Positions 437-51,553 are shown, counted from the first letter of the stretch. The stretch is DNA of 64,000 nucleotides from IMGVR_UViG_3300032236_001850:370510-434509, one strand, 5' to 3'. Numbers and translations: made by a program. The notes: generated by a model not told the origin, from the letters alone.

Positions 437-985
437 ATGATTATAAAATCTTTTTCTGAATTTAACGAATCCAATCTGGATGAATCATATTATGATCAAT
501 ATCACGAAACCCATGGTAAGACATCTTTTACCAGATGGCTTAGAAAAATAGGTGATAAAATAGGAATAGGAGATAGTGGATATACCAGTTACTATGCAGA
601 TTCTGATCCCAATTCTGACGCTATACTTAGTGGGAGAAGAGCTATTGCAGCTACTGTAAGTGGACTCGCAAAAGGTACCGCTTCATTTATAGATTTTTTA
701 TCTCCTGGTGAAGATATAAAATCCTGGAAAGATCTTGACAAGGAAGAAATAAAAAGAAGAAAAGAGGAGATTATTAGAAAATGGGAAGCTGAGCATATAG
801 AGAATAAACATGTTACTGACCACGATGCCGAGGAATTTTATAAATCTGGAGTTCTTAGAGGGAAAAAATATTTTGGTAACGATTTTAAGCCACAAGATCC
901 TAAAAGTAAGGATGAAGAGATATACAGAGATTATCTTAGAGATGTAATGAATACCTATTATAGAAAAACCAAAAAGAAAAAATAG
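437..985 (+). CDS. Hypothetical protein with capsid-targeting-like N-terminus
   Basis: Begins MIIKSFSEFNESNLDE. Confidence 0.6.
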   Translation: MIIKSFSEFNESNLDESYYDQYHETHGKTSFTRWLRKIGDKIGIGDSGYTSYYADSDPNSDAILSGRRAIAATVSGLAKGTASFIDFLSPGEDIKSWKDLDKEEIKRRKEEIIRKWEAEHIENKHVTDHDAEEFYKSGVLRGKKYFGNDFKPQDPKSKDEEIYRDYLRDVMNTYYRKTKKKK

Positions 986-996
986 GATGAGTAACG

Positions 997-1917
997 ATGA
1001 ATAGGATACTCAATTTTTCTGATTTTATTTTTGAAGGTGGTGCTGCTATAAAAACTTCCAGAAGAATAAGGGAGGATGAATTTCCAGAAACACTGAAGAG
1101 TATACAGGAAAATCTTTTTCCGCTTATTGGTATGGTTCCTAGCAGAATCAACGATCAATATGTTGTTATTGGTAGTATAGGTAAAAAACAAAATCCCGAG
1201 GATACATCTGGTGATTTAGATATTGGTTATGATGCAATATGGTATTCACAGGATAATGGCATAGAGAAAAAGGAATGTTCTAGTTTTATTTATGAGAAAA
1301 TAAAAAATGGGATTGGTGATGTGCTTGGATTTGTACCAGAGATTAATTATATGAGAGGACTTAATATAGTTAGTTTGGGATGGCCAATAAAGGGTGATGA
1401 AAATAACGGTTTGGTTCAGCTTGACCTTATTCCTTTATCTGATATGGCATGGGCTGATTTCATATATTATTCACCAAACTACAAAGTTGGTGAGAGTAAA
1501 TATAAATCCGCTCATAGAAACTGGCTTTTAGCTGCTATATTATCAGCTAGGAAGGAGATTAGAGAAAGAGATCAATTTGGTGAAATATTGGATTATGATA
1601 CGCCTGTTCTTATTTTAAGTGATGGTCTATATTGGCACACTAAATCATATAGAGGTAAGATAAAAGACAGATTAAAGAATCCTAAAAAAATAGAGGGAAG
1701 CGAGAGATTTATCACTAATGATCCTCAGGAATTTATAGATTTTGCTTTAGGTAAAGGTTATACGGAAGATGACGTTAAAACTTTTGAGAAGTTATTTAAT
1801 ATAGTAATTTCACCTGATTTTGAATTAAAAGATAAATTACCAGAAATAAAGGAAAGATTTTTGGAATTTTTACAAAGAGTTGGACTAGAAATACCTACAG
1901 AGGTTAACGAAATATAA
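997..1917 (+). CDS. Pol-beta-superfamily nucleotidyltransferase with CTS-like N-terminus
   Basis: hGS...SGDLD motif, third Asp in VQLDL; N-terminus MNRILNFSDFIFE. Confidence 0.65.
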   Translation: MNRILNFSDFIFEGGAAIKTSRRIREDEFPETLKSIQENLFPLIGMVPSRINDQYVVIGSIGKKQNPEDTSGDLDIGYDAIWYSQDNGIEKKECSSFIYEKIKNGIGDVLGFVPEINYMRGLNIVSLGWPIKGDENNGLVQLDLIPLSDMAWADFIYYSPNYKVGESKYKSAHRNWLLAAILSARKEIRERDQFGEILDYDTPVLILSDGLYWHTKSYRGKIKDRLKNPKKIEGSERFITNDPQEFIDFALGKGYTEDDVKTFEKLFNIVISPDFELKDKLPEIKERFLEFLQRVGLEIPTEVNEI

Positions 1918-1937
1918 TAAACATTAAAAAGCTAATT

Positions 1938-3971
1938 ATGGCAGGCATCAGTCATTTATATGATATTTATAACAAAAAGGGTAAAGATTTTATTGATAAT
2001 CTCTTTAACTCCTATGTGACAATTAATGAAAAAATGGATGGTTCTGCTTTTGTCTTTGAGAGAGATCCAGAAACGGGCAGATTCAATTTTTACAAGAGGG
2101 ATCAAAGATATCCTATAACTTTAGTTGATCGTACTTTGATGAAATACTACGAGAAGCCCATAAATTATATAGAATCTTTACCTCCACACATTCTTAAGGA
2201 AATTCCTAGAGGATGGAGATTTGGACTTGAATATTTTTCAAACAACCAACCTGTTGAAATTGCTTATGATAGATTACCTAAGAATAATCTGATACTCTCG
2301 TACATCCACACCAAAAACGATAATGGTAAACCTGCATCCACAATACAGGATCAGGAACAACTCGATAATTGGGCAGATTTACTTGGTGTTGAAAGACCAC
2401 CGATCATATTCCAGGGTATGTTAACTGATGATCAGAAAAATCAGATACTTGATTTTTTAAGAACACCCTTTGATCAATTAGTTTCTGAATTCAAGACTAA
2501 AAGCTTTGTTAGGTACATAATTGGGGTTCTTAATCCCGAAGCTAAAACAAGCGCACTTAATAACGATCTTGATAAACCGATAGAAGGAATAGTCTTTAGA
2601 TTTGGTGAGGATGATAATGGTAAAGAACCTATTTTATCCAAAATGGTAGATCCGGTTTTCACCGAGATGGCCAAAGAAAAATATAATAAAAGATCGACTG
2701 AAAGACCTAGCGATTTTCTGGGTCTAACAATAATGGATATAATGAACTTCATTTTAGAGGAGGGAGTTGAATCTTTCAATGTTGCCGGCGATACTGATGA
2801 TGAGAGATACATTTCTTTCATATCTGACGTTTTTGTTAAGTTTCTTTCGGAGTATGCCTATAAATACAGAGGAGCAGATTTTCAGGAACCTGAATATTTA
2901 AAGAAGGATGAATTCAGACTTAATCACGATATGATAAAGGATAAAAGAGTTCTTAAATATCTTGATACTGATGATTCTTACGAATCTCTATTCAAGCTTA
3001 TGCTTAATTCTTTTAGAAAAATAAGAAAAAGAGCAAGCGGAATAATAACTCCCGGTATAATAGATCAATTTAATATAGTTGTTAGTGACATAGAAAGAGT
3101 TGTTTCTAAAGAACCTAAACCTGCTATACAAGAGTCCGAAGCTATACCATCATTCATGGATTTCAAGAAAAATAATCTGTCATCTAAGAGAATAGATTAT
3201 GTAACTAGCGAATCTGACAATTCTGAGGAAGCTGATACTGATGATCCATTTTATTCATATAACGAGTTCATATCGGCTCTAGAAACAATAGACACCACCA
3301 AGAAAGATAAATCAAAAGAAATCAACGAGGACACTGAGGAGGATAAAAAGAAACTTCAACCTGTTAATCTATTAGTTGGCAGATTTCAACCATTCCATAA
3401 TGGACATTTAAAAATGGTGGATCAGTTATACAAGGAAAATGATCTTCCTAGCATAATTGCAGTTGTGCATCCTGGTCATAATAAATCCGGTAAATCCCCA
3501 TATGATGAAAAATTAATTTCTCGATATATGGAGGGAATAGTTAGAGACAATCCCGGAAAAATAGCTGGCTACTTTGTGGTAAATAGAGGTCTTCTAGGAC
3601 CAATATACGGTAAGGCAAAGGAGCATGGATTTATTCCTAAAGTTATAGGTGCTGGTGATGATAGAATAGAAGATTATAATAAACAAGCAGATTATCTTAA
3701 AAAAGCTGGAGGTGATTTTCCGGAGGATATAAAAATAGTGCAAACGAAGAGATCTTCCAGTGGAACCGATGTTAGAAAAAAGATAGAAGCTGAAGATTAT
3801 GTTGGTTTCAAGAAACTTGTTCCTCAAGCTGTAGCTAATGTTTATAACTCATTAATAGATGCCCAAAAAGGTAAAGGTATTAAGGAGGATGAAGAAAAAG
3901 AGTTTGATGAGTCGGAACTTATATCAGAATCCATAATCGCTGAAGAGATAGAAAAAAATAACCAAGAATAA
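1938..3971 (+). CDS. Fusion of an ATP-dependent RNA-ligase-like domain and a HIGH (cytidylyl/NMN adenylyl-transferase-like) domain
   Basis: NEKMDGS (I), GLEYF (III), EGIVF (IV), SKMV (V); C-terminal GRFQPFHNGH and SSGTDVR. Confidence 0.7.
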   Translation: MAGISHLYDIYNKKGKDFIDNLFNSYVTINEKMDGSAFVFERDPETGRFNFYKRDQRYPITLVDRTLMKYYEKPINYIESLPPHILKEIPRGWRFGLEYFSNNQPVEIAYDRLPKNNLILSYIHTKNDNGKPASTIQDQEQLDNWADLLGVERPPIIFQGMLTDDQKNQILDFLRTPFDQLVSEFKTKSFVRYIIGVLNPEAKTSALNNDLDKPIEGIVFRFGEDDNGKEPILSKMVDPVFTEMAKEKYNKRSTERPSDFLGLTIMDIMNFILEEGVESFNVAGDTDDERYISFISDVFVKFLSEYAYKYRGADFQEPEYLKKDEFRLNHDMIKDKRVLKYLDTDDSYESLFKLMLNSFRKIRKRASGIITPGIIDQFNIVVSDIERVVSKEPKPAIQESEAIPSFMDFKKNNLSSKRIDYVTSESDNSEEADTDDPFYSYNEFISALETIDTTKKDKSKEINEDTEEDKKKLQPVNLLVGRFQPFHNGHLKMVDQLYKENDLPSIIAVVHPGHNKSGKSPYDEKLISRYMEGIVRDNPGKIAGYFVVNRGLLGPIYGKAKEHGFIPKVIGAGDDRIEDYNKQADYLKKAGGDFPEDIKIVQTKRSSSGTDVRKKIEAEDYVGFKKLVPQAVANVYNSLIDAQKGKGIKEDEEKEFDESELISESIIAEEIEKNNQE

Positions 3972-3974: not shown

Positions 3975-4520
3975 ATGAAAAAATTTATTGCATCGTTTGA
4001 TCAATTTACAAATCCAATTAATGAAAATGATGGATTTGGTACATCACCATTCCTTATGAAAAAAGTAGGTGATGTTTATCATTATTTTTTCAGTCTTGAT
4101 AGTGAGGACGAAGAACATGAGATGGGATATCATTTAATTATAGGTAAATATTCTGAGAATGAACCTATAGAAGGTGCTAAAAATTCATATTGTGTACTCA
4201 ATATAAATCAGATAGGTCATGAGCTTATTGAAGATATAGCAGTAGATAAGGAGGATATACCTACTCCTGATACAACTGAATTTTTAGTTGATGGAAATGA
4301 GCTTTCAAGATTGGTGGAACAGATCTTTAAATGTGTTCTTGATTATCTTTCGTTGAATCCAAAGGTTGTTAGAATATATGACAATTTGCAAGACAATCTG
4401 GAGTATAAAGGTAAAGGAGAATATATAGAATATATGAAGTCAATATGTGTGTCCAAACTTGGTAAAAATTGGTCCGTTCAAAATGGATCAACACAAAAAT
4501 CATTAATTTTAAGCAGATAA
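3975..4520 (+). CDS. Hypothetical protein with CTS-like N-terminus
   Basis: MKKFIASFDQFTNPINE. Confidence 0.6.
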   Translation: MKKFIASFDQFTNPINENDGFGTSPFLMKKVGDVYHYFFSLDSEDEEHEMGYHLIIGKYSENEPIEGAKNSYCVLNINQIGHELIEDIAVDKEDIPTPDTTEFLVDGNELSRLVEQIFKCVLDYLSLNPKVVRIYDNLQDNLEYKGKGEYIEYMKSICVSKLGKNWSVQNGSTQKSLILSR

Positions 4521-5257: not shown

Positions 5258-5265
5258 GATATATA
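5258..5265 (+). promoter_or_regulatory. GATATATA putative late promoter
   Basis: Directly after terminator, before ATG 5284. Confidence 0.6.
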
Positions 5266-5665: not shown

Positions 5666-6091
5666 ATGAAAAAGCAGATGAAAAATCTTCTGAATTTTAA
5701 ATCATATTCACCCGAATATGAATATAAAACCGAGTACAGAAGAGAAATTGAATTGGATCGTGTAAGAAAATCTAGAGAATATAGAAGACTATTGGCTCTT
5801 GGATTCGATGAGGACACTTCACATCAGCAGGAAATAAACAACACTATGAAGTTTGTCAGAAGTGTTAAGAAACAAAAAGAGATTGGGCATGGTGACGTCT
5901 TTTATACCATACATCCATCAGGTACGGTTAGAAGATATAATCCAATAAAATCAAAGGAAGTAAAAGAAGGAAACGGTAACGATATAAAAAAATTCTCAGC
6001 ACCTTTTAAATCTGCTAAGGATTATGCTAAAGGATTAAATTTTCTTTGGCAGTATCTAAAAAGAAAAGAGGCTAGAGGAGATTACAGATAA
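5666..6091 (+). CDS. Hypothetical protein with CTS-like N-terminus
   Basis: MKNLLNFKSY. Confidence 0.55.
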   Translation: MKKQMKNLLNFKSYSPEYEYKTEYRREIELDRVRKSREYRRLLALGFDEDTSHQQEINNTMKFVRSVKKQKEIGHGDVFYTIHPSGTVRRYNPIKSKEVKEGNGNDIKKFSAPFKSAKDYAKGLNFLWQYLKRKEARGDYR

Positions 6092-6892: not shown

Positions 6893-7282
6893 ATGTCCAG
6901 AGAGATACTGATACAAGAAAATTATCCTAATGAACCTTGGAAAATGCTCGTTTGTTGTATATTATTAAACCAATCCCATAATAGATCTGTACGACCGATT
7001 TTAGACGCCGTATTTGAATTTATTCCTGATCCTGATTCTGCAATCAAGTGTGATGTTGAAAGTCTAGCAGCGATCATAAAACCAACCGGTTTGTACAACG
7101 TAAAGGCTAGAAGAATAAAATGGATGAGTGTGGGATACAAAAAAGGCTTTAAAAGAGTTACCGATCTACCAGGAATAGGTTTATATGGTAATGAATCCTG
7201 GGAGATATTTGTTAATGGTAATCTCGACATAAAGCCAACGGATAAAAAGCTTAGAGCTTATTTGGATGCCGTTTTATTTTGA
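6893..7282 (+). CDS. HhH-GPD DNA glycosylase, MBD4-like
   Basis: PWKMLVCCILLNQ, LPGIGLYG HhH motif, DKKL ending; no Fe-S cluster. Confidence 0.75.
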   Translation: MSREILIQENYPNEPWKMLVCCILLNQSHNRSVRPILDAVFEFIPDPDSAIKCDVESLAAIIKPTGLYNVKARRIKWMSVGYKKGFKRVTDLPGIGLYGNESWEIFVNGNLDIKPTDKKLRAYLDAVLF

Positions 7283-8245
7283 TATTTTTACTCTTAGATT
7301 TATTGGTTCTTTAAGTACTGGATTTGAAACATAGAAAGGTTTTGCAACTTCACATTTCACAAACTTTTTATTTTCACCTAATGGTAGATATATTACATCA
7401 CCAGGTTTAAACATCTTGTGAATTTTTAATTTTTTACCATCTCTTTCGAATTCAAGATCCATTTCTATATGATCGTCAAATATTGCCCAATTATCTGTTC
7501 TACCAAATTTTTTGAATTTCTTATTAATGATTCTGAAAACCTTACCTGTAACAAATCCATCTTCCCCTAATTTGGATGCAAATTTTATAGGTTTACCTTT
7601 CTTAAGATTATAAGTTTTTATTTTTGAATTATCAAGACCAAAGCTTTCTTTTGGTACTTTCTTTGATTCTTCTTCTGTGAGAACTGTACCATCACTTGAT
7701 ATAAACAATTTAAAATCGTAGTTTTCCTTAGGTTTGGTAACAATATATTTGAGTTTTTCCTCATCGTATTTCACCTTACTTAATCCTGCATGAAATTCTA
7801 TTGACTTGTTTATTTCTTCGTGTGACTCGTCATCTTTAAAAATTCTTATAGTTCTTGCTATATTTTCAATAATTGGGATGTAAATCTGATTTCCCTCTTT
7901 TGCTGATTGCTCGGCTTTTAGATTAGCTGGAACATAAACATTTAGTGGATAAAATTTACCCATAAATTTAAAATGTGTTTCCATCATGGGATAACCGGTT
8001 GCTGTTTTGTCTGGGAATTTTAACCATTTAAGAACCTCATTCAGTCTATGGTCATATTCCTTTGCAAGTAAATCAGCGCAAGATTTTTTAATTTCCTCTA
8101 TTTTTCCGTTATCGAAATAATTAGACAACATGGTGGGAAAATCTATATTTTCTGGTTTGTAAAATCTTTCAATCTCCTCAACATCAACCTTTATGGTTAA
8201 TCTTGCTTCATTTATCCAACCCTGAAATTTTTTTAAATTGTTCAT
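7274..8245 (-). CDS. Hypothetical protein with CTS-like N-terminus
   Basis: MNNLKKFQGWINEA. Confidence 0.6.
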   Translation of the reverse strand: MNNLKKFQGWINEARLTIKVDVEEIERFYKPENIDFPTMLSNYFDNGKIEEIKKSCADLLAKEYDHRLNEVLKWLKFPDKTATGYPMMETHFKFMGKFYPLNVYVPANLKAEQSAKEGNQIYIPIIENIARTIRIFKDDESHEEINKSIEFHAGLSKVKYDEEKLKYIVTKPKENYDFKLFISSDGTVLTEEESKKVPKESFGLDNSKIKTYNLKKGKPIKFASKLGEDGFVTGKVFRIINKKFKKFGRTDNWAIFDDHIEMDLEFERDGKKLKIHKMFKPGDVIYLPLGENKKFVKCEVAKPFYVSNPVLKEPINLRVKISK

Positions 8246-8550
8246 TATTCTTTTTTCTTTGAATTTTTTGCTTGAAATGTTGTTTTTAGATATTCTGTTA
8301 TATCTGATCCTGATTTCTTATCTTCATTCAGAAACTTATTAAATTCCTCGGATTTGCCACATTCATCTAAGAAATCATGAAAGTAGGCTTCTTCGTACAT
8401 GGCATCTATAGTTTCTGGCATTGTTGGATCTGCGCTCTGGTAGTTTCTGCTATTTACTTTGGTCTGATAAGAATCACCTGGAACATCAATACTTCCTGGA
8501 GAATCAATCCATTCATTAACAAAACCTTTAAATTTTTGTAAATTTTTCAT
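8245..8550 (-). CDS. Hypothetical protein with CTS-like N-terminus
   Basis: MKNLQKFKGFVNEW; GATATATA at 8557-8564 on minus strand. Confidence 0.6.
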   Translation of the reverse strand: MKNLQKFKGFVNEWIDSPGSIDVPGDSYQTKVNSRNYQSADPTMPETIDAMYEEAYFHDFLDECGKSEEFNKFLNEDKKSGSDITEYLKTTFQAKNSKKKE

Positions 8551-8619
8551 ATTATTTATATATCTGCCCGGAACATAAGTTTATTATGATGTAAAACATA
8601 TACATTAAAATATTTCTGA

Positions 8620-10028: not shown

Positions 10029-10094
10029 TATTAGTCTCGGTAGATCTGAATCTGGGTTGATATATAAAATCCAAGAGCGATCTAGAGTCTAGTA
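10029..10094 (+). other. Long imperfect hairpin with GATATATAA in the loop
   Basis: TATTAG/CTAGTA, CTC/GAG, TAGATC/GATCTA, TCT/AGA, GGGTT/AATCC arms. Confidence 0.6.
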
Positions 10095-11593: not shown

Positions 11594-11615
11594 AAATAAA
11601 AAATTAACTTAAAAT

Positions 11616-14108: not shown

Positions 14109-14122
14109 AAAAATAAATTGTA

Positions 14123-14791
14123 ATGGAAAACAACAAATGGTTTAATGACGATGTCATAAAAAAATTCGATGAATTTTTAAACGAGAGAGAATTACCAGAT
14201 TCTCAGGGGGATGTACTAGTTATGCTAGGAGCTCCTGGCTCCGGTAAAGGAACACTTTCAAAACAGCTGAATGAAAAATTTGGGATAAATCATATATCAA
14301 CTGGTGATCTAATAAGAAAATCCGATGATCCTGAATTGAAGAAAATAGTTGAGTCAGGAAAGTTCATATCCGATGAAATGATGCTTAAAATGCTAAGAAA
14401 AGAGCTAAAAAAGCTTGATCTTAATAAAGGTATAATTTTTGATGGATATCCAAGAACAATAAAACAAGCGAGAAAGCTTGATTCGTTATTGGGTAAATTG
14501 GGTCTTGGTTTAAATCATGCTATATTTATGGATCTTCCGGAGGATAAGGCTAAGGAGAGAATAAGAAATAGAGCTAAGAAGGAGGGAAGAAAGGATGATG
14601 CAAGTGATGAGGTTATAGATAAAAGATTTGCCGAATATCACGAGAAAACTTTTCCTCTTGTTGATTTTTACAAGAAAAGCAGAAAATTAATAAAAATTGA
14701 TGCTGATCTTGGTATGGAAGGAGTTCTTAAATCCATAGTTAAAAAGTTGGGTCTTAAAAAACCTAAAAAGAATAGAGATGAAAAAATCTAG
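14123..14791 (+). CDS. adk: Adenylate kinase with CTS-like N-terminal extension
   Basis: GAPGSGKGT, HISTGDLIR, DGYPRT, RKDD; leader IKKFDEFLNE. Confidence 0.9.
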   Translation: MENNKWFNDDVIKKFDEFLNERELPDSQGDVLVMLGAPGSGKGTLSKQLNEKFGINHISTGDLIRKSDDPELKKIVESGKFISDEMMLKMLRKELKKLDLNKGIIFDGYPRTIKQARKLDSLLGKLGLGLNHAIFMDLPEDKAKERIRNRAKKEGRKDDASDEVIDKRFAEYHEKTFPLVDFYKKSRKLIKIDADLGMEGVLKSIVKKLGLKKPKKNRDEKI

Positions 14792-15431: not shown

Positions 15432-15447
15432 TATTAAAAAGCTTTAA

Positions 15448-16716: not shown

Positions 16717-16756
16717 TCTAATTACTGGATATATACTATAAAAATTAGGAAGTAAA

Positions 16757-17290
16757 ATGAGACACCTTTTGGAATTTGAATCTTATGAAGGCTTAGATGA
16801 AGCTGGAATACCAATATATAATGCTGATGACTTTAGAAGGAGTCCTTCCAGTGAACCTGAGGATGAGGTATCAACCACTAAAATCTTCTCCTATATAAAG
16901 GATCTATTGGAACAACAAAAAGCTGGACAGATAGAAGAAATCAGTATGACTGTGGATTTACCATTACAAGGTAAAAAAGCTCCACAACACGTTCTTGATA
17001 CTCTTGACGCTGAAAGAAAAAGAATAGAGAAAGAACAGTATGCTATTAGAGGTAGCAGAACAGAAGCAGCTGATGTTGCTCCTGGTGATAATATCTACGG
17101 TGGTGAAGGTAGAAATCTTTTTGTTGATAGTGAGTATATAGTTACAGGAATCACCAATTTGGATGGAACAGATTACATTATAGGATTACCGGTTTCTAAG
17201 AAAAAAGAAGCTTTTAGTTCCCCTGAATCTATAGCTTATTATTCAACTTTTATAGAACCTAAACAAATAGAAGAAGTTTTTTATTCATAG
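16757..17290 (+). CDS. Hypothetical protein with CTS-like N-terminus
   Basis: MRHLLEFESYEGLDEA; GATATATA at 16728-16735. Confidence 0.6.
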   Translation: MRHLLEFESYEGLDEAGIPIYNADDFRRSPSSEPEDEVSTTKIFSYIKDLLEQQKAGQIEEISMTVDLPLQGKKAPQHVLDTLDAERKRIEKEQYAIRGSRTEAADVAPGDNIYGGEGRNLFVDSEYIVTGITNLDGTDYIIGLPVSKKKEAFSSPESIAYYSTFIEPKQIEEVFYS

Positions 17291-19172: not shown

Positions 19173-19175
19173 ATA

Positions 19176-19208
19176 TTTTTTTATATCGAATAAATAATTT
19201 ATATTTGC
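19176..19208 (+). promoter_or_regulatory. Bacteroidota-type promoter (T-tract..CG-N11-TATATTTGC)
   Basis: TAnnTTTG -7 consensus 12 nt before ATG. Confidence 0.7.
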
Positions 19209-19220
19209 ATAAAAAATAAC

Positions 19221-25769: not shown

Positions 25770-25811
25770 TTGTATTGTCTTTAGGATATATACATGATAA
25801 AATAATCAAGG

Positions 25812-27287
25812 ATGATGATATCAAAAAATGTACTGGACTTTTCCTCTTTTCTAAACGAAGCAAAATCCAATGCTGTTCAGGTAATTATGCTAATAGGAGG
25901 TGGAACCAATGAGTTCTCAAGATCCTTTGAAGCAGAGTGTAAGAAGAAAAAAATAAAGGTAACTGTATTTGACGTTGATCTTGCCGAAGTTACCAGAAAT
26001 AAAACCGGTGGTGGACACACAGTAACGGAAGGCAAAAAAATTGCTTCCATAGATCCATCAAATACTGTTGTTATTGCTAGATCTGGGTGTCTTAAGAGCA
26101 CACATAATAAGGAGCTTCTTATGGAGCTTGAAAATTCTAAATATTATGTTGTGAATAGATTAAGACCGATGGAAATATGTGAAAATAAATACATCACATC
26201 AGAGTTTCTTGAAAATTTAGATTTACCCGTTCCTAGATATTCTCTTATAGCATCTGAAGATCATATAGATGCAGCAGTTAAAAAAATCGGTGGTAAATTT
26301 CCAGTTGTTATGAAACTTCTTACTGGATCTCAAGGTATTGGTGTTTCCATTATTGATTCTCCAAATTCACTTAAATCTGTTTATCAAACAATTAAAAAAC
26401 TTGACGAGAAGAGTGAGGTATTAATACAGGAAAAAATAGAATCCAAATACGATCTAAGGATACATGTTATTATTAGAGACACAAGTATTAAAAATATAAA
26501 TAACACTGATAACTTCAAGGTTATTGGTGCTATGAGAAGAAATGCAGTTGGTAAGGATTTCAGAACAAATTATTCCCTTGGTGGAACGGTATCTAATGTT
26601 AAACTTAGTAAGGAAGTAATTGAAACAGCAATTAAAGCTGCTAGTGCAGTTGGATGTAATTGGTGTGGTGTTGATATAATGATCGACGAGAAAACTAAAA
26701 AACCTTACATATTGGAAGTTAATTCATCTCCTGGTACTGAGGGCATATCTAAAGCATTAGGTAAACCTATTGTGGATGATGTTATAAAATTTGTAATGAA
26801 CAGAGAAAATTGGGTTATACCTTCATCAGAAGTTGGTTACTTAGAGGTTATGGAAATAGAGGGTCTAGGTAAGGTGATAGCTAAATTTGATACTGGTAAT
26901 GGTACTCTTTGTTGTTGTTTACATGGTGATAAATTGGAGGTTAAAGGTAAAACCTTACATTTCCAAATAGGTCATAAAAAATTCACAAAAAAAATAACTG
27001 GATATACTGATGTTTCTGGTGGTATGCACACTAAAGGAACAAAGAAAATGCCAACGGTTAAGATGGATTTAAAATTTGATGGTGCATGGACAAAAGATGT
27101 TGATGTTGCAATAGTAGATAGAACAGATAAGAGCACACCATTTTTAGTTAATAGAAAAACTATGAGACAAATGAATGTTATAGTAAATCCAAACACAAAA
27201 TTCATAGTTACTGAAAATTTTGACGATAGATATAGTCAATATACATCAAAAGGAAAACCTCATGCAGGTATTGAATTTGAAAAATAA
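25812..27287 (+). CDS. rimK: RimK-family ATP-grasp ligase fused to a retropepsin-like (RimB / 'ATP-dependent Zn protease') domain
   Basis: GSQGIGV, DFRTNYSLGG, GVD, EVNSSPG; AKFDTG..LVNR protease motif; leader VLDFSSFLNEA; GATATATA at 25785. Confidence 0.8.
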   Translation: MMISKNVLDFSSFLNEAKSNAVQVIMLIGGGTNEFSRSFEAECKKKKIKVTVFDVDLAEVTRNKTGGGHTVTEGKKIASIDPSNTVVIARSGCLKSTHNKELLMELENSKYYVVNRLRPMEICENKYITSEFLENLDLPVPRYSLIASEDHIDAAVKKIGGKFPVVMKLLTGSQGIGVSIIDSPNSLKSVYQTIKKLDEKSEVLIQEKIESKYDLRIHVIIRDTSIKNINNTDNFKVIGAMRRNAVGKDFRTNYSLGGTVSNVKLSKEVIETAIKAASAVGCNWCGVDIMIDEKTKKPYILEVNSSPGTEGISKALGKPIVDDVIKFVMNRENWVIPSSEVGYLEVMEIEGLGKVIAKFDTGNGTLCCCLHGDKLEVKGKTLHFQIGHKKFTKKITGYTDVSGGMHTKGTKKMPTVKMDLKFDGAWTKDVDVAIVDRTDKSTPFLVNRKTMRQMNVIVNPNTKFIVTENFDDRYSQYTSKGKPHAGIEFEK

Positions 27288-27530: not shown

Positions 27531-28006
27531 TTCTTACCGAAAAAATCAGTGTATGATAAAACCCTACGGTCATTAGATTGTGGGGTTTCTTCTTGATTAC
27601 CAGTTTCCATCTCTGCATCATCAGGTTCAGATAAATCATCTTCATCCTCCTCGTCGTAATCTGCATCGTCGTCATCCTCATACTCCTCATCTGGATTTTC
27701 TACCTCCTCGTCATCCTCGTACTCTTCGTCTGGATTTTCTACCTCTTCATCATCATCGTAGTCTGAGTTGTCTTCATCTTCCTCATACTCTGAGTCGTCA
27801 TAGTCCTCATCCTCCTCGTCGTATTCATCATCATAATCCTCATCTTCTGATTCGTCGTCATATGTTTCATAATCATCGTTACCGTAGTCTGAGTCATCGG
27901 TATCATAAGTTTCATACTCCTCTCCATATTCACCTGATTGTGAATCGTCACCAGATAGATATGAATCGTCATTAATAAACTCGTCTTCTTCTTTTAAATG
28001 TTTCAT
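27527..28006 (-). CDS. Extremely acidic (Asp/Glu/Tyr) protein
   Basis: D/E-dominated; EEVENPDEEYEDD twice; ends VLSYTDFF. Confidence 0.7.
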   Translation of the reverse strand: MKHLKEEDEFINDDSYLSGDDSQSGEYGEEYETYDTDDSDYGNDDYETYDDESEDEDYDDEYDEEDEDYDDSEYEEDEDNSDYDDDEEVENPDEEYEDDEEVENPDEEYEDDDDADYDEEDEDDLSEPDDAEMETGNQEETPQSNDRRVLSYTDFFGKN

Positions 28007-28028: not shown

Positions 28029-28040
28029 AATATATATATC
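28029..28040. promoter_or_regulatory. Possibly bidirectional (TA)n late promoter
   Basis: GATATATA on minus strand (28033-28040) between two divergent CTS-motif genes. Confidence 0.5.
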
Positions 28041-28064: not shown

Positions 28065-28376
28065 ATGTCCGCTATACTGGAATTTTCCGAATTTAATGAT
28101 TCTAATCTAACAGATTCTGAAATGAGAACGATTAAGGAATGGGTTAAGAAATATGAAAAATATTTTAATTTTCACGATGGTGAAAATTTTGATTCCTCTA
28201 TAGATCAGTTAGCATCAGATGTTATGTCACAGACTGGCATAGATCAATCAAAAACTAATGATGTTGTTTCTTATCTTGAGGAGCTATATTCACTGTCGGA
28301 CGGATTATCTGTTGTTATGGCACCGGATAGACAATTTCAAGATACCGATATAGACCAATTAACAAGATTTTGGTAA
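28065..28376 (+). CDS. Hypothetical protein with CTS-like N-terminus
   Basis: MSAILEFSEFND. Confidence 0.6.
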   Translation: MSAILEFSEFNDSNLTDSEMRTIKEWVKKYEKYFNFHDGENFDSSIDQLASDVMSQTGIDQSKTNDVVSYLEELYSLSDGLSVVMAPDRQFQDTDIDQLTRFW

Positions 28377-28393
28377 AAATATCAGGTAAATAA

Positions 28394-28426: not shown

Positions 28427-28443
28427 GTCATAATTAAAGAAGA

Positions 28444-31750: not shown

Positions 31751-31768
31751 ATCACTAAATTTAAAATT

Positions 31769-34089: not shown

Positions 34090-34677
34090 AGATGGAAAAA
34101 CCTGTAATATTAGGACCGGATTTCAAGGCCATAAACGAACCTTCGGAAAGCATAAAAAAGCACTATGCTAAACTTTATGAAAGAAATCAAAATAAATTCA
34201 TAAGAAGATCCAAACTTGAACAATCCCACTTGGGAAGTGAGTTTGAACACAATGGTAGAACCCTTAGACTTATAGGATCAGCTGATAGTGATAGAATGGT
34301 GGTTGTTGACGAATCAGATAACACTTACTATTTTATACATTCGGATATCCCAACCAATGCAATATTAAACAAAGAATAAGATTTTGTTAGAATATTATAT
34401 AAAAACTATAGACCCAAGATCACATATAGGCGTATGTGAAATTATCTCTTTAATGGGGATAGAAATACTTGAGGATGGATTTGGTGATTCTACTGATGAT
34501 TACTATGGTATTTTTAAAGTTTTCTCTGATACTGATGCTCTTGACGTTCTTTCCGACCTTCCGGATGTCCAAATAGATTTTCCTAGCGAAAGAGTAATTA
34601 GATAAAAATCCTGATAATACTTGGATATATAAGTCAAATAAACTTTAGGTGTATTGGGCGATAAACCAAAAGTAATT

Positions 34678-38903: not shown

Positions 38904-38915
38904 GGATATATAATA

Positions 38916-39884: not shown

Positions 39885-39958
39885 TCTAGTATCGTACAAA
39901 GGCACCACGATACAATAAAATTTAATCTAAGTGGATATATAATAATAAAATCTACAAA

Positions 39959-40351
39959 ATGGAAAGAATAAAAAGTTTTGATTTATTTGAGGATGAAAGT
40001 ATTGGTCCTCCTGAACAAAAAATATACAGTAAATATTACCAGGGACCTTCTGCCTGGCCTACAGTTGTTGATGCGTTAGCTATTATTAGTAAAAATCAAA
40101 ACGGAGATGGAGATGGAGATGGTTTAGTAAAGCCATCACAGGAGCTAGTTGATTTTATTAAAGACAACAGTTCGGAGGATGGATTAGATAGTTCAATAGC
40201 AGGATTTTTTACTGAAATATTGAAAGCAGTTAAAATTGCTAATAGTAGTTTATATACCAAACTGGGTGGAGAATCAATGATTAGAGCTATTGAGGGAATG
40301 CAGAACGATTACGTTGCTACCCACAACACAGATGGTACTAAAAAATTCTAA
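39959..40351 (+). CDS. Hypothetical protein with CTS-like N-terminus
   Basis: MERIKSFDLFEDES; GATATATA at 39934. Confidence 0.6.
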   Translation: MERIKSFDLFEDESIGPPEQKIYSKYYQGPSAWPTVVDALAIISKNQNGDGDGDGLVKPSQELVDFIKDNSSEDGLDSSIAGFFTEILKAVKIANSSLYTKLGGESMIRAIEGMQNDYVATHNTDGTKKF

Positions 40352-40395: not shown

Positions 40396-40830
40396 ATGGA
40401 AAGAATAGCTTCATTTGAACAATTCAAAAGAAATGGCGCATCAATGGATGAATATAATTCTGAGATAGAGGCAACAAACGAAAATAGTACGGATGACAAA
40501 AAACATTATATGTTTTTTAGAAATGTGCAATCAATCAAGCACTATATTGATGAGATCATGAAAATGGACAAAGATAAAATCGATGAACTTCTTGAGGATG
40601 GTCATGATTGGGCTGCTGATCACATATCAACCGCTAAAACAGACATTGAGGAAGTTGCTGAATGGTTAAGAGACGAATTTGAAGATGCAGAGGAATCTGA
40701 CGATGAGGAAGAAAATGAACCGGAGGAAGCAGAAGAAACTGAGGAGGAACCAGAAGGTGAGGAATCTGATGAAACAGGAGAAGAACCAGAAGGGGAGGAA
40801 GAGGAAAAAACAGGAAAGGAACCTCTATAA
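40396..40830 (+). CDS. Hypothetical protein with CTS-like N-terminus and Glu-rich tail
   Basis: MERIASFEQF; EEPEGEE repeats. Confidence 0.6.
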   Translation: MERIASFEQFKRNGASMDEYNSEIEATNENSTDDKKHYMFFRNVQSIKHYIDEIMKMDKDKIDELLEDGHDWAADHISTAKTDIEEVAEWLRDEFEDAEESDDEEENEPEEAEETEEEPEGEESDETGEEPEGEEEEKTGKEPL

Positions 40831-40848: not shown

Positions 40849-40874
40849 AAAACCAGCCAAAGGCTGGTTTTTTT
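40849..40874 (+). terminator. Rho-independent terminator
   Basis: AAAACCAGCC-AAA-GGCTGGTTTTTTT. Confidence 0.8.
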
Positions 40875-40913
40875 GTGAAACATAATTATTATTTAAAATA
40901 TGATATCTGATTA

Positions 40914-40946
40914 TTTTTTTAATCCGAATTTTTAAATTATATTTGC
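40914..40946 (+). promoter_or_regulatory. Bacteroidota-type promoter
   Basis: TTTTTTTAATCCG-N11-TATATTTGC. Confidence 0.7.
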
Positions 40947-47810: not shown

Positions 47811-47843
47811 TTTTTTATTCTCGAGAGCCTGATCTATATTTGT
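47811..47843 (+). promoter_or_regulatory. Bacteroidota-type promoter
   Basis: TTTTTTATTCTCG-N11-TATATTTGT. Confidence 0.65.
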
Positions 47844-47872
47844 TGATATTTTTATATTAAAATCGTTAAAAT

Positions 47873-48674: not shown

Positions 48675-49088
48675 ATGGAACTAATATCATCACACCCAAT
48701 AAAGAAATCAGATTTAGGATTTCATGGTAATCTATTCGGAGGAAAATTAATGGCCTGGATGGATGCAGGAGCTGCTGTTTATGCAATGGAAGCTTGTGAT
48801 TCACCAAGAATGGTAACTATACTCATAGATAAATGTGTTTTCAAGAAACCTGCCAAGGAAGGACAGATCATTAAGATCTATGGTGAGGTACTAAGTATTG
48901 GTAACACATCAATCACTCTTTATATGGAAGCTAGATCGCATAATGTTTATTCAGGAACACAATCTGTGATTCTGTCAACAAATATGAAATTCGTACGAAT
49001 TGACGAGAATGGTGATCCTATTCCTATCTCCGATAAAGTGAAGGAGAAATACAAGGACAATGGGGAAAAGGAAAAAGAATCCAGATAG
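48675..49088 (+). CDS. Acyl-CoA thioesterase (hotdog fold, YciA-like)
   Basis: HGNLFGGKLMAWMD, FKKP, GNTSI, FVRID. Confidence 0.85.
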   Translation: MELISSHPIKKSDLGFHGNLFGGKLMAWMDAGAAVYAMEACDSPRMVTILIDKCVFKKPAKEGQIIKIYGEVLSIGNTSITLYMEARSHNVYSGTQSVILSTNMKFVRIDENGDPIPISDKVKEKYKDNGEKEKESR

Positions 49089-49404
49089 GGATCTGGATAG
49101 AAAAAAATGGGCTGATGATCTTATGGGTCGCTACGGTCAATTACAGGAAATAATGGACAATACACCAATTTCTGAAATTGAATGGAAACCTGATAATACT
49201 GACATTTTCCTACCAATACAAAGAGTTTTTGCAAAAACTGTTGGTCTAGATCTGGTCGAGGTTGCACCAATGTCTGCACCGACTGGGATGTTATTCTACA
49301 TGGATCCAGCTACAATTCTTACCGACGAGGAACAAATTGAGAGAGATGCAGCCAAATGGATGAGAGAAAATATTGAATGGGTAAAAATAAAATTAGATAA
49401 ATGA
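49060..49404 (+). CDS. Small protein carrying a gp23 Gol-region-like segment
   Basis: LPIQRVFAKTVGLDLVEVAPMSAPTGMLFYMD. Confidence 0.65.
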   Translation: MGKRKKNPDRDLDRKKWADDLMGRYGQLQEIMDNTPISEIEWKPDNTDIFLPIQRVFAKTVGLDLVEVAPMSAPTGMLFYMDPATILTDEEQIERDAAKWMRENIEWVKIKLDK

Positions 49405-49937
49405 AAAAAACACTAGTTATAAATTTCTACGGAGGACCTGGATCAGGTAAAAGCACAACTGCTGCTCGTATATTTTCAGAGCTTAAGGATAAAGGATATA
49501 ATGTCGAACTTGCTACCGAATATGCAAAGGATATGACCTGGCAAAAATCTTTTCATGTTCTTGGAAATCAGGTTTATATATTTGCTAAACAACAACATAG
49601 AATATGGAGACTTGATGGTATGGTTGATATGATAATAACTGATGCGCCTCTATTAAATAGTCTCGTATATGGTGACACTAGTGATACTTTCAAGTCTCTT
49701 GTTATTGAGGAATATTGGAAGAGACCAACTTTCGACGTTTATTTGAATAGGGTAAAGAAATACAATCCTGCAGGAAGATCCCAGCATCTTGAAGAGGCAA
49801 TAGAGATAGATAAAATAACAACCAGAAGAGTCGAGGAGGTTAAAGAGTTTGATCTTATAGTCGATGGTGAGAAGAATTCAACCGAAGAAATAGTAAACGG
49901 CATATTAGAAAAATATAAAGAATTACAAAAATACTAA
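49401..49937 (+). CDS. P-loop kinase (NadR/AAA_28-like)
   Basis: GGPGSGKST, EYAK, ITDAPL, GR. Confidence 0.75.
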   Translation: MKKTLVINFYGGPGSGKSTTAARIFSELKDKGYNVELATEYAKDMTWQKSFHVLGNQVYIFAKQQHRIWRLDGMVDMIITDAPLLNSLVYGDTSDTFKSLVIEEYWKRPTFDVYLNRVKKYNPAGRSQHLEEAIEIDKITTRRVEEVKEFDLIVDGEKNSTEEIVNGILEKYKELQKY

Positions 49938-50581
49938 TAATGATACATTTTTTAAGAAACCCTAAGGGTCAAACACTAATAGAATGCGAAGCAATGGAGG
50001 AAGATCTTAGTGCTTCAATGTATGTTTGGAACTACACAATGGAAGTTCTTTACAGAGCTAAACAATCAACAACTGAGGTTCTTGAATTTGCACGTACCAT
50101 GGACGACCTTGATGAGATAAGAGGCCTATGGTGGGAGAAAGCAAGAGACATGGAGGATTGGCAAAGCATAGATGATTTCGTTGCCCATCATTTCAAAGCT
50201 GCTGCTAAAAAATATGATCTGAATTACGTAACGGATTAAATATGAAAAAGAGATTTGAATGCCAAAGAAAAAATATGCGATGTCTAAATTGGACCGCTAT
50301 TATAACCTGGACTATTATATTTACTATAGCCTATAACCTATTCAAATGGTTATATGGTCTTGTATTTTAATTTCTATTAGGGAATAAAGGATCTGGTTGT
50401 ATATCTGGATCCTTCTTATTCTTTAAATATTCCATGGCGGACATACCGACCTGGTCTATAAAACTTGGCATCTTGAATGGCTCTCTACATTCACCACCAA
50501 CATTAACACTCCCCACCAGACCTGGATTCATAGCTTCCAGTCTTTTAGAGATCATGTCTAAATATTCTTGACTTGGTTTCA

Positions 50582-51553
50582 TTATTTTAGCTTACCTACT
50601 AATTTCTTTATCTTTTCTGGATCTTCCAATAGTCCTGGATTCTGTGCATCATAATCCATGAATTTCTTGCTTAATTTTGGATTTTCTAGAACCGCAGTTA
50701 TTAGATCCATAGCTTTATTGTCCGGTATATTTACTATGGCTTTAAAGAACGTCTTCATGTCAAGGTCATCAAAAAGGGAAACTATTCTTTTGCATGCTTC
50801 AATTGATAATTCATCATTAATAGATGTTCCATATGTTTTTACGAAAGTTGGGATGTTGACATTCCCTTCCAATATCGATTTTATAGCTGATGGTCCTAAA
50901 TTTATTGCCGATGCATATAAGATGTCCTCAATTATATTTATAACGTCCAATTTTTCTTCTCTTGTATAGAATGGATGATCCTTGGTTATAACGGTAGCAT
51001 GAAATCCTCCGTTATAATCATTAACTGTATCCACATTGGGGTTACCATATATCGTTACATAACCAGGTGCAGGAGCGCTCAATCTTATTGCCATATTATC
51101 AATTAGTTCCTTTGCTGAATCACGTCGAGATGAATATCCTCTGGTTCCTCTATAATGAGGCCATCCGCTAGAAGTGCTCTCAGCTGGTAAGCTTATATCT
51201 GCTTTTCTAAAAGTTCTTTTATTTATAAGATTGCTTATAATATTAACAGTTGATGTTCTTCTTTCTGGTCTTTGTGTAACAAGACCATTTTCATCGTCTC
51301 TATATAAATCAAAATCACTAAATGGAACTAGATCGAATTTCTTTTTTAGCTCAGCAAACTCTGGTATCTGAAGAAGCTCCTCAAACTTAGGAAGATATTT
51401 GGTGATTTCCTTTTTAGGTGGTTTCTTCATACCAGCAAATCCCGACTTCTTAAGAATGTTATTAACCTTCTGTAGCTTTTTAAAATTTTCTATATCTAGT
51501 GGCTTTTCTTCCTCGTTTTCGTTCATGAGGAATTCTTTGAATTTTTTAATCAC
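50582..51553 (-). CDS. Hypothetical protein with CTS-like N-terminus
   Basis: MIKKFKEFLMNE; GATATATA on minus strand at 51572-51579. Confidence 0.65.
   Translation of the reverse strand: MIKKFKEFLMNENEEEKPLDIENFKKLQKVNNILKKSGFAGMKKPPKKEITKYLPKFEELLQIPEFAELKKKFDLVPFSDFDLYRDDENGLVTQRPERRTSTVNIISNLINKRTFRKADISLPAESTSSGWPHYRGTRGYSSRRDSAKELIDNMAIRLSAPAPGYVTIYGNPNVDTVNDYNGGFHATVITKDHPFYTREEKLDVINIIEDILYASAINLGPSAIKSILEGNVNIPTFVKTYGTSINDELSIEACKRIVSLFDDLDMKTFFKAIVNIPDNKAMDLITAVLENPKLSKKFMDYDAQNPGLLEDPEKIKKLVGKLK

What the first reader, a model, noticed from the sequence alone, without database searches (positions are those of the whole stretch)
437..51553. Shared capsid-targeting-like motif marks about 15 proteins, including enzymes, as a predicted packaged and injected cargo set
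Seen: unrelated ORFs share (I/L)xx(F/Y)xx(F/Y/W), often followed by (L/I)NE. N-terminal copies: 437 IKSFSEFNE, 997 ILNFSDFIFE, 3975 IASFDQF..INE, 5666 LLNFKSY, 7274 LKKFQGWINE, 8245 LQKFKGFVNE, 14123 IKKFDEFLNE, 16757 LLEFESY, 25812 VLDFSSFLNE, 28065 ILEFSEF, 39959 IKSFDLF, 40396 IASFEQF, 50582 IKKFKEFLMNE. C-terminal copies: 5284 LKDYRDW, 6323 MISYKEF, 27527 VLSYTDF. Internal copies lie in the 1938 linker. Most of these genes follow GATATATA. Known: T4 internal proteins use an N-terminal CTS (MKTYQEFIAE) removed by gp21 after (I/L)xE. Inference: this phage loads adenylate kinase, a RimK-protease, a nucleotidyltransferase and a ligase-HIGH fusion into the head as a pre-made takeover kit, and the tag also works at C-terminal and internal positions.
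Basis: partly seen in the sequence, partly recalled or inferred. Interest (0 to 1): 0.85.

Follow-up and report, generated by a model that had tools for sequence, protein, structure and literature searches.

The report
T4-like head-targeting tags in huge phage
Thirteen otherwise unrelated proteins of this 434-kb uncultivated Bacteroidota phage start with a short tag that matches phage T4's capsid-targeting sequence at every functionally mapped position, so they are probably loaded into the phage head, and the tag may let us read the packaged proteins of a whole uncultured phage group from sequence alone.

Summary
The N-terminal motif is real and non-random. Thirteen proteins carry h-x-x-F-x-x-[FYW]-(h)-N-E within residues 2-21, against about 2 expected (z=7.4). 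A scoring matrix trained only on another genome (LR756500.1) recovers them (p=1.5e-8). The proteins share nothing beyond the tag.

The conserved positions equal those mapped in T4's tag MKTYQEFIAE: aromatics 4 and 7 for targeting, I8 and E10 for gp21 cleavage after L/I-x-E.

The window is the last 64 kb of a 434.5-kb IMG/VR contig, from a clade related to LR756500.1. That clade has T4-type portal, Peptidase_S77 protease-scaffold and Gp23 capsid genes. In relatives, tagged genes sit between and just after the protease and capsid genes.

All 11 GATATATA sites are intergenic and co-oriented. In relatives the same element precedes portal, protease, tail-fibre and endolysin genes.

Not supported:
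- The 1938 ligase-HIGH fusion as tagged cargo; one "internal copy" is its HxGH catalytic motif.
- The C-terminal copies, which are marginal (p=0.044, post hoc).

Untested: cleavage, packaging and injection. This contig's own head genes were not retrieved.

Verdict: a new member of a known kind, unreported in the literature searched, at unusual scale (13 of 105 genes here, about 32 in LR756500.1).

The parts
443..469 (+). Tag IKSFSEFNE (residues 3-11) of ORF 437-985, 182 aa, no known family
   Evidence: matrix score 8.8; orthologues keep I-K-S-F-x-E-F and a downstream L/I-x-E; GATATATA 26 nt upstream
1006..1035 (+). Tag ILNFSDFIFE (residues 4-13) of ORF 997-1917, 306 aa, Pol-beta-like nucleotidyltransferase candidate
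   Evidence: 11.6; orthologues keep F-x-x-F ... [IL]-F-E-GG; structural neighbours of its Atlas cluster are nucleotidyltransferases
3987..4025 (+). Tag IASFDQFTNPINE (residues 5-17) of ORF 3975-4520, 181 aa
   Evidence: conserved in five orthologues
5687..5716 (+). Weak tag LLNFKSYSPE (residues 8-17) of ORF 5666-6091, 141 aa
   Evidence: not among the top matrix hits
8207..8236 (-). Tag LKKFQGWINE (residues 4-13) of ORF 7274-8245, 323 aa
   Evidence: orthologues vary at x positions but keep F, W and [IV]-N-E
8512..8541 (-). Tag LQKFKGFVNE (residues 4-13) of ORF 8245-8550, 101 aa
   Evidence: (10.7); GATATATA 14 nt upstream
14156..14185 (+). Tag IKKFDEFLNE (residues 12-21) in the 30-residue N-terminal extension of adenylate kinase, ORF 14123-14791
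   Evidence: ADK domain 34-186; best matrix score, 20.6; solved adenylate kinases start aligning at residue 31-32
16766..16801 (+). Tag LLEFESYEGLDE (residues 4-15) of ORF 16757-17290, 177 aa
   Evidence: GATATATA 29 nt upstream
25830..25859 (+). Tag VLDFSSFLNE (residues 7-16) of the RimK-like ATP-grasp protein with a conserved C-terminal domain, ORF 25812-27287
   Evidence: Mosig homologue starts MQVQPFKNYLEE; 12.7; GATATATA 27 nt upstream
28074..28100 (+). Tag ILEFSEFND (residues 4-12) of ORF 28065-28376, 103 aa
   Evidence: 7.4; AATATATA variant 36 nt upstream
39968..39997 (+). Tag IKSFDLFEDE (residues 4-13) of ORF 39959-40351, 130 aa
   Evidence: GATATATA 25 nt upstream; weak by the LR756500.1 matrix (3.8)
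40405..40452 (+). Tag IASFEQF ... MDE (residues 4-19) of ORF 40396-40830, 144 aa, very acidic (net charge -41)
   Evidence: second gene behind the promoter at 39934
51518..51550 (-). Tag IKKFKEFLMNE (residues 2-12, GTG start) of ORF 50582-51553, 323 aa
   Evidence: 12.8; the ESM Atlas record of this protein starts at residue 10, read as M, so it lacks the tag; GATATATA 26 nt upstream of the GTG
27968..27997 (-).
   Evidence: (second-best matrix score, 13.5); GATATATA 34 nt upstream
411..418 (+). GATATATA promoter-like element before 437
5258..5265 (+). GATATATA before 5284 (run includes tagged 5666)
8557..8564 (-). GATATATA before 8245-8550 (run includes tagged 7274-8245)
10059..10066 (+). GATATATA before 10128; the same-strand run continues through nrdB and nrdA to tagged adenylate kinase
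16728..16735 (+). GATATATA before 16757
25785..25792 (+). GATATATA before 25812
28033..28040 (-). GATATATA before 27527-28006; its A/T run also gives AATATATA on the + strand before 28065
34624..34631 (+). GATATATA before untagged 34654
38905..38912 (+). GATATATA 116 nt before untagged 39021
39934..39941 (+). GATATATA before 39959 and 40396
51572..51579 (-). GATATATA before 50582-51553

Best explanation
The shared N-terminal peptide, (I/L/V)-x-x-F-x-x-(F/Y/W)-(L/I/V)-N-E, is a T4-type capsid-targeting sequence, that is, a propeptide.

Proposed mechanism:
1. The tagged genes are transcribed from a phage-specific single-element promoter, GATATATA. This is the same promoter class that drives portal, protease-scaffold, tail-fibre and lysis genes in relatives.
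2. The tag's hydrophobic residues fall at positions 0, 3, 6 and 7, which lie on one face of a helix. This face binds the scaffolding core of the assembling prohead.
3. Once the shell closes, the gp21-family (Peptidase_S77) prohead protease cuts after the hydrophobic-x-Glu site that ends the tag.
4. The mature protein stays in the head with the DNA.

What is shown: the motif, its position-specific enrichment, its conservation in orthologues, its identity with the T4 determinants, the T4-type head genes of the clade, tagged genes inside head gene clusters, and the shared promoter.

What is inferred by analogy with T4: binding to the core, cleavage, retention in the head and ejection into the host. 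I put head targeting and processing at about 0.75, and delivery of active enzymes into the host at about 0.5.
For: 1. Statistics. 12 proteins carry the strict motif against 1.9 +/- 1.4 in N-terminal shuffles. The independent LR756500.1 matrix gives p=1.5e-8. There is no paralogy and no DNA-level repeat.

2. T4 match. T4's tag is MKTYQEFIAE (PMC8442874). Residues 4 and 7 target, residues 8 and 10 govern processing, and gp21 cuts after L/I-x-E (PMC9026906). These are exactly the conserved positions here. Relatives even carry MKNYREFIAE (L021) and MKRVKSYNEFIAE.

3. Orthologues at 77-85% identity vary the x positions but keep the motif positions.

4. Clade. gp32, a split topoisomerase II and a split family-B DNA polymerase are present. 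The nearest GenBank genome, LR756500.1, has a portal, an S77 protease-scaffold fusion and a Gp23 capsid gene in T4 order, plus about 32 tagged proteins.

5. Head clusters. Across about 80 relatives, the gene between protease and capsid carries a tag in 10 of 16 distinct N-termini, and the gene after the capsid gene in 27 of 67.

6. Cleavage-site consistency. Capsid proteins of the clade begin ..QLINE-AE and the proteases ..LLILE-RS, both hydrophobic-x-E.

7. Promoter. All 11 window sites are intergenic. [GA]ATATATA directly precedes 7 of 13 tagged genes against 6 of 92 others, p=9e-5. NATATATA lies upstream of portal in 52 of 64 and protease in 68 of 75 distinct upstream regions. It also precedes Mtd_N/collagen tail-fibre genes and a PG_binding/GH19 lysin. 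Host-type TATATTTG promoters never precede tagged genes.

8. Add-on nature. Adenylate kinase has a 30-residue extension absent from solved adenylate kinases.
Against: - This contig's own protease, scaffold and capsid genes were not retrieved, so their presence is inferred from relatives.
- No proteomic or cleavage data exist.
- Adenylate kinase sits in a run with the ribonucleotide reductase genes. GATATATA also heads that run and other untagged genes, so the promoter is not proof of strictly late timing.
- Four of the 13 copies are weak by the independent matrix, and four lack a clean hydrophobic-x-E right after the second aromatic.
- In Adk and the RimK-like protein the tag starts at residues 12 and 7, not at the extreme N-terminus as in T4 IPIII.
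- The 'structural protein' label on the YerA41 homologue is weak, because that record also reports ribonucleotide reductase in particles.
Confidence: 0.75

Rival explanations
1. The tag does target proteins to the prohead, but most tagged proteins are scaffold or core components, or assembly factors. Like T4 gp22, gp67 and gp68, they would be degraded or expelled rather than delivered as cargo. The 'pre-made takeover kit' reading would then be wrong even though head targeting is right.
For: Tagged genes lie exactly where T4 has its core genes, between protease and capsid. Many tagged proteins are small orphans with no known family. T4 core proteins are cut into fragments that leave the head (PMC9026906).
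Against: Folded enzymes (adenylate kinase; ATP-grasp plus C-terminal domain) make unlikely scaffolds. The tagged proteins are very diverse in charge and size. T4 precedents exist for retained, ejected tagged proteins (the internal proteins and Alt).
Confidence: 0.2
2. The peptide is a docking motif for a replication or nucleotide-metabolism hub, such as the sliding clamp, the single-strand binding protein or a dNTP-synthesis complex. It would recruit enzymes to the replisome rather than to the capsid.
For: Tagged genes are scattered through a replication and nucleotide-metabolism region. Adenylate kinase follows nrdB and nrdA. Short aromatic terminal peptides are typical of clamp binders (my own recollection of the RB69 polymerase tail, not checked here).
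Against: The same tag marks genes inside head gene clusters of relatives. It matches the T4 tag position by position, including the cleavage site. It is strongly tied to the N-terminus. The DNA polymerase C-terminus ends in a different tail..NLFMVNALF. Most tagged proteins are orphans rather than replication enzymes.
Confidence: 0.05
3. The shared start is a leader spread by recombination along with the promoter, or a feature favoured for translation initiation in an A+T-rich genome. It would have no targeting function.
For: The tag often follows the promoter at a fixed 25-29 nt. F, K, N and E are A/T-rich codons.
Against: Shuffling each protein's own first 25 residues, which keeps composition, gives 1.9 +/- 1.4 hits against 12 observed. 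Nucleotide identity between copies is only 0.48 and codon choice varies. Tagged genes also occur as second or third genes without their own promoter (997, 3975, 7274, 40396, Adk). The pattern persists across genomes from 24% to 40% G+C.
Confidence: 0.04

Closest known systems
[quoted passage not shown]
   Same: A short N-terminal peptide on otherwise unrelated proteins, with an aromatic pair spaced i/i+3 followed at once by hydrophobic-x-Glu. The clade has gp20, gp21 and gp23 homologues. An enzyme cargo has a precedent in Alt. A single 8-bp A/T-rich promoter is shared with the head genes.
   Different: The consensus adds a hydrophobic residue three positions before the first aromatic, and Asn at P2. 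The tag can start as late as residue 12. The number of tagged genes is far larger (13 of 105 here, about 32 in LR756500.1, against a handful in T4). The cargo includes adenylate kinase, an ATP-grasp protein and hyper-acidic proteins. The protease is fused to a roughly 400-residue scaffold-like extension. The host is a Bacteroidota member. Nothing has been shown experimentally.
Propeptides of head and ejection proteins of phiKZ-like giant phages (phiKZ gp175, SPN3US gp245; cleavage after S/A-x-E or A-x-E)
   Same: A giant phage with many internal head proteins processed by a gp21-related protease that cuts after Glu (PMC5694885 and PMC9026906).
   Different: Those propeptides are mostly over 100 residues with no shared targeting consensus, and they have a small residue at P3. 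Here the tag is 10-20 residues, has a strong consensus and has a hydrophobic P3, as in T4.
Phage P1 Dar system (DarA/Hdf-dependent head incorporation of anti-restriction proteins)
   Same: Head-packaged proteins delivered with the DNA (papers listed; not read in detail).
   Different: P1 incorporation depends on a hierarchy of specific proteins rather than on a common cleavable N-terminal tag. No homology was seen.

Membership tests
T4-type capsid-targeting sequence (cleavable N-terminal propeptide) | Short peptide within the first 10-20 residues, shared by proteins that are otherwise unrelated | tested here: met
   13 ORFs; similarity limited to the first 13-18 residues; position-specific enrichment
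T4-type capsid-targeting sequence (cleavable N-terminal propeptide) | Two aromatic residues spaced i/i+3 (T4 residues Y4 and F7, the targeting determinants) | tested here: met
   F-x-x-[FYW] in all 13 copies; T4 determinants from PMC9026906 and PMC8442874
T4-type capsid-targeting sequence (cleavable N-terminal propeptide) | A gp21-type cleavage site (L/I)-x-E directly after the second aromatic (T4 residues I8 and E10) | tested here: met
   Hydrophobic-x-E at or within 10 residues after the aromatic pair in 9 of 13 (INE, VNE, LNE x2, IFE, INE, LDE, MDE, MNE). The others have E or D without the hydrophobic P3. Orthologues keep or shift the site.
T4-type capsid-targeting sequence (cleavable N-terminal propeptide) | The same genome encodes a gp21-family (Peptidase_S77) prohead protease with a scaffolding core | tested here: inconclusive
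   Not found in the 75 kb of this contig that could be read, and four collection scans did not return the contig. Present next to a Gp23 capsid gene in LR756500.1, in the L058 phage and in about 75 relatives.
T4-type capsid-targeting sequence (cleavable N-terminal propeptide) | Expressed together with head genes | tested here: inconclusive
   Tagged genes share the GATATATA/NATATATA element with portal, protease, tail-fibre and lysin genes of relatives. The element also heads the nrdB-nrdA-adk run. No expression data.
T4-type capsid-targeting sequence (cleavable N-terminal propeptide) | The tag is removed in the prohead and the mature protein is present in virions | not testable with these tools
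   Needs virion proteomics or N-terminomics
T4-type late promoter (gp55-dependent TATAAATA) | A single A/T-rich octamer without a -35 element, a short distance upstream of virion genes | tested here: met
   Octamer 14-36 nt before starts in 9 of 11 window sites. Found upstream of portal and protease genes in most relatives. It matches TATAAATA (consensus from my own knowledge of T4) at 6 of 8 positions, so it is a variant, not the same sequence.
T4-type late promoter (gp55-dependent TATAAATA) | The phage encodes a gp55-like late sigma factor | tested here: inconclusive
   A weak homologue in LR756500.1 only (phmmer E=5e-7 to Mosig gp55; Sigma70_r2 below cut-off). None in the window.
Sliding-clamp-binding terminal peptide | Found on polymerase and other replisome proteins, usually at the extreme C-terminus | tested here: not met
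   The tags are N-terminal and mostly on orphan proteins. The polymerase tail is a different sequence.
phiKZ-type giant-phage propeptides | Small residue (S/A/G) at P3 of the cleavage site, and long propeptides without a consensus | tested here: not met
   P3 is L/I/V/M, and the tag is 10-20 residues with a strong consensus (comparison)

The most novel reading that the evidence does not exclude
The tag defines a very large virion-delivered protein arsenal, covering tens of proteins or roughly 5-12% of genes. It would run across a whole clade of uncultivated Bacteroidota huge phages (relatives of LR756500.1 and LR756504.1, and hundreds of IMG/VR contigs). The cargo would include a metabolic enzyme (adenylate kinase), an ATP-grasp ligase fused to a further domain, a Pol-beta-type nucleotidyltransferase and hyper-acidic proteins that look like DNA mimics. 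A second, C-terminal signal may exist (NADDFGF[FL]DN in LR756500.1; acidic-aromatic tails in the window). If so, the packaged and injected proteome of uncultured megaphages could be read directly from sequence.
Probability: 0.45. Interest if true: 0.75.

Novelty: new member of a known kind. Interest (0 to 1): 0.62.

Why it matters
Huge phages of this kind have never been cultured, so nothing is known about what they carry in their heads. A tag that can be read from sequence, backed by the T4 experiments, gives a direct and testable list of candidate head-internal or injected proteins for each genome. It also shows that T4's packaging address label is much older and more widely used than the handful of T4 internal proteins suggests. 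It flags unexpected cargo: a nucleotide kinase, an ATP-grasp enzyme and extremely acidic proteins. Finally, it offers a portable tag and protease pair for packaging foreign proteins in phages of Bacteroidota. In the full-text search made here, no paper held 'capsid targeting sequence' together with 'huge phage', 'megaphage' or 'jumbo phage' among the 15 listed of 285 matching at least two terms.

Tried and rejected
- Paralogy of the tagged proteins: rejected; all-against-all BLASTP finds only the tag itself.
- A DNA-level repeat or cassette: rejected.
- A compositional artefact of A/T-rich gene starts: rejected by shuffling within the first 25 residues.
- Function of the orphan tagged proteins: Pfam, PHROGs and PDB sequence searches gave nothing for 437, 3975, 7274, 16757, 39959, 40396 and 50582. 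The Atlas hit of 7274 to an 'IpIV internal head protein' cluster scores only 0.62 and is not evidence.
- Megablast of the window against GenBank phages: no match.
- Retrieving this contig's own head genes: four IMG/VR scans with capsid or protease queries from relatives did not return the contig. The searches saturate at 600 hits, of which 80 are kept.
- The 46.5-kb contig from the same sample (L058): it turned out to be a different phage with its own RNR and polymerase, 46% identical.
- Orthology between 997 and the tagged LR756500.1 gene next to the ligase-NTase gene: not detectable.
- C-terminal use of the tag: marginal.
- Basic charge of tagged proteins, as in the T4 internal proteins: not seen.
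- One 50-kb piece of Prevotella phage Lak-B1: no clear tags. A 50-kb piece of LR756504.1 has about three.
- tRNA and Rfam scans of the window: nothing.
- The YerA41 'structural protein' annotation: judged weak.

Full report
**What the window is.**
The window is the last 64 kb (positions 370,510-434,509) of a 434,509-bp contig. The contig is JGI Ga0335263_1453039, also held as IMGVR_UViG_3300032236_001850. It is 33-37% G+C. It encodes T4-style replication genes:
- a split topoisomerase II, a split family-B DNA polymerase, and ribonucleotide reductase;
- gp32, just upstream of the window.

Proteins with Bacteroidota-type signal peptides, and type-IX-secretion sorting domains in the orthologous cluster of relatives, point to a Bacteroidota host. 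There is no near relative among GenBank phages by DNA. By gp32 the nearest records are LR756500.1 (an uncultured 462-kb phage, 44% identity), LR756504.1 (636 kb) and the Prevotella Lak phages.

**The observation.**
All 13 N-terminal copies are present. The consensus is (I/L/V)-x-x-F-x-x-(F/Y/W)-(L/I/V)-N-E, starting at residue 2-12.

The enrichment is strong:
- Twelve proteins match a strict form. The rate at internal positions predicts 1.7, and composition sampling predicts 2.7.
- Shuffling each protein's own first 25 residues predicts 1.9 +/- 1.4, z=7.4.
- A position matrix built only from 32 N-termini of LR756500.1 places its eight best window hits all at N-termini. At score >=8 that is 8 N-terminal against 1 internal hit, p=1.5e-8.

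The tagged proteins share nothing else. The tag is written with varied codons. Five orthologous contigs at 77-85% identity change the x positions and keep the motif positions.

They are not enriched beyond a post hoc p of 0.044.

The two "internal copies" in ORF 1938 are explained away. One is the HxGH signature of its cytidylyltransferase-like domain. The other is at chance level. ORF 1938 has no N-terminal tag: its ..TINEK.. stretch lies at the very start of the Pfam RNA_ligase match (residues 26-222) and, from my own knowledge of ligase motif I (KxDG), looks like the catalytic lysine motif rather than a tag.

**What the motif corresponds to.**
T4's capsid-targeting sequence is MKTYQEFIAE (PMC8442874). 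Amber-suppressor mapping placed targeting at residues 4 and 7 and processing at residues 8 and 10. The gp21 protease cuts after L/I-x-E (PMC9026906). Aligned on the aromatic pair, T4's Y-Q-E-F-I-A-E and the window's F-D-E-F-L-N-E agree at exactly those four positions.

More distant relatives carry near-copies of the T4 tag:
- MKNYREFIAE in L021;
- MKRVKSYNEFIAE next to capsid genes;
- about 32 proteins in LR756500.1 that begin MK[YF]I..Y..F[LI].E.

**Does the clade have the machinery?**
LR756500.1 encodes three adjacent genes in T4 order:
- a portal (Portal_T4);
- a 632-residue protein whose N-terminal part is Peptidase_S77, the gp21 family;
- a Gp23-family major capsid protein.

A second relative, the L058 phage, has the same arrangement, with a tagged 182-residue gene (MQHIKLFEDFLNE) between protease and capsid and two tagged genes after the capsid gene.

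About 80 IMG/VR relatives were retrieved by capsid similarity. Among them the gene between protease and capsid is tagged in 10 of 16 distinct cases, and the gene after the capsid gene in 27 of 67. The capsid proteins start ..QLINE-AE and the proteases ..LLILE-RS. Both are hydrophobic-x-Glu sites near the N-terminus, as noted for T4 gp21.

I could not retrieve the head genes of this particular contig. Their presence is inferred from the clade.

**The promoter.**
GATATATA occurs 11 times, no more than chance (6.6 +/- 3.1). But all 11 are in the 4.3% of the window that is intergenic, and all point at the next gene, usually 25-36 nt before the start. [GA]ATATATA directly precedes 7 of 13 tagged genes and 6 of 92 others (p=9e-5). 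The remaining tagged genes are later members of runs that start at such a site. This includes adenylate kinase, behind the site at 10059.

In relatives, NATATATA lies within 60 nt upstream of:
- portal genes, in 52 of 64 distinct upstream regions, and protease genes, in 68 of 75;
- two Mtd_N/collagen tail-fibre genes and a peptidoglycan-binding GH19 lysin.

A second promoter class ends in TATATTTG. This is the Bacteroidota -7 type, an attribution from my own knowledge. It precedes 19221, 28444, 31769, 47873 and 51645, and never a tagged gene.

GATATATA differs from the T4 late promoter TATAAATA (my own knowledge) at two of eight positions. Because the element also heads the reductase run, it marks a phage-specific class shared with virion genes, not proven late-only timing.

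**The cargo candidates.**
- Adenylate kinase carries the tag (residues 12-21) inside a 30-residue extension. Solved adenylate kinases align from its residue 31-32.
- The RimK-like ATP-grasp protein carries it at residues 7-16. Its homologue in the T4-like Pelagibacter phage Mosig begins MQVQPFKNYLEE.
- ORF 997 falls in a viral cluster whose predicted structure resembles Pol-beta-type nucleotidyltransferases (a lead only).
- The rest are orphans.
- Two promoter-linked proteins are extremely acidic: 27527-28006 has net charge -79 and a tag-like start, and 40396 has net charge -41.

**Mechanism and rivals.**
The best reading is a T4-type targeting propeptide. An amphipathic N-terminal peptide docks on the prohead core. 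The S77 protease removes it after hydrophobic-N-E. The mature protein stays in the head. Docking, cleavage, retention and injection are inferred by analogy.

The main rival keeps head targeting but makes many tagged proteins disposable core parts. A replisome-docking motif, a recombining leader and chance are each contradicted by the head-cluster location, the shuffles and the codon variation.

**Novelty.**
This is the known T4 system found in a new, uncultivated clade and at much larger scale. In the full-text search made here, none of the 15 listed papers on huge phages, megaphages or jumbo phages (of 285 matching at least two terms) contains the phrase "capsid targeting sequence".

Noticed in passing
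window 19150-19220, 28380-28443, 31720-31768, 47815-47872, 51590-51644 (also about 40850-40942): A second, host-like promoter class: a T-rich stretch (TTTTTTATTCCGAATTTTT-like) followed by TATATTTG shortly before the start. It is never found before tagged genes. At 51.55-51.65 kb it sits back to back with a GATATATA site driving the opposite strand.
   Followed up: partly
window 49060-49404 (+): A 114-residue ORF contains a 34-residue stretch (..VGLDLVEVAPMSAPTGMLFYMD) that is 53% identical to residues 90-123 of the LR756500.1 major capsid protein. Pairwise E=5e-9; Pfam Gp23 at 18.8 bits, below cut-off. It may be a capsid-protein fragment or mimic, far from any head gene.
   Followed up: partly
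window 59222-64000 (-): A conserved cluster of secreted proteins with Bacteroidota-type signal peptides (150, 148 and 920 aa, plus a gene cut by the contig end). The contig ends inside a Ser/Asn/Gly-rich repeat of that last gene. Relatives add a Cohesin + Por_Secre_tail (type IX secretion) protein upstream. The 430-kb sister contig ends near the same place, which suggests both assemblies broke at this repeat.
   Followed up: partly
window 27527-28006 (-) and 40396-40830 (+): Extremely acidic proteins (net charge -79 over 159 aa, and -41 over 144 aa), both behind GATATATA and with tag-like starts. Their composition is reminiscent of DNA-mimic anti-restriction proteins.
   Followed up: no
LR756500.1 (L032-L041), e.g. 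11601-17016, 180972-181730, 198758-199531, 313382-313912: Twelve proteins end in (N)ADDFGF(F/L)DN or a close variant, and most also start with the N-terminal tag. Several look like paralogues (shared ..LELIAKLAK..). This could be a second, C-terminal signal or just a family signature.
   Followed up: partly
window 8620-10026 and 24353-25498 (+): The family-B DNA polymerase is split into two genes 14 kb apart, as in LR756500.1 and the L058 phage. The C-terminal piece ends ..SPNLFMVNALF, a candidate clamp-binding tail distinct from the tag.
   Followed up: no
window 1938-3971 (+): An RNA-ligase-like domain is fused to a cytidylyltransferase-like (HxGH) domain. The fusion is conserved at 35% identity in LR756500.1 (265948-267909) and is flanked by tagged genes in both genomes.
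   Followed up: partly
window 50582-51553 (-): The tag is visible only with the GTG start at 51553, which sits at the usual 26-nt distance from GATATATA. The ESM Atlas holds this protein only from residue 10, read as M, so automatic annotation may undercount tags.
   Followed up: yes
window 29516-29866: A 351-nt stretch without an ORF of 45 aa or more. No tRNA or Rfam match was found anywhere in the window.
   Followed up: partly
LR756500.1 193332-197824 (-): The large terminase matches three separate ORFs (E=2e-46, 4e-27, 2e-15). This suggests a gene interrupted by introns, inteins or homing elements.
   Followed up: no
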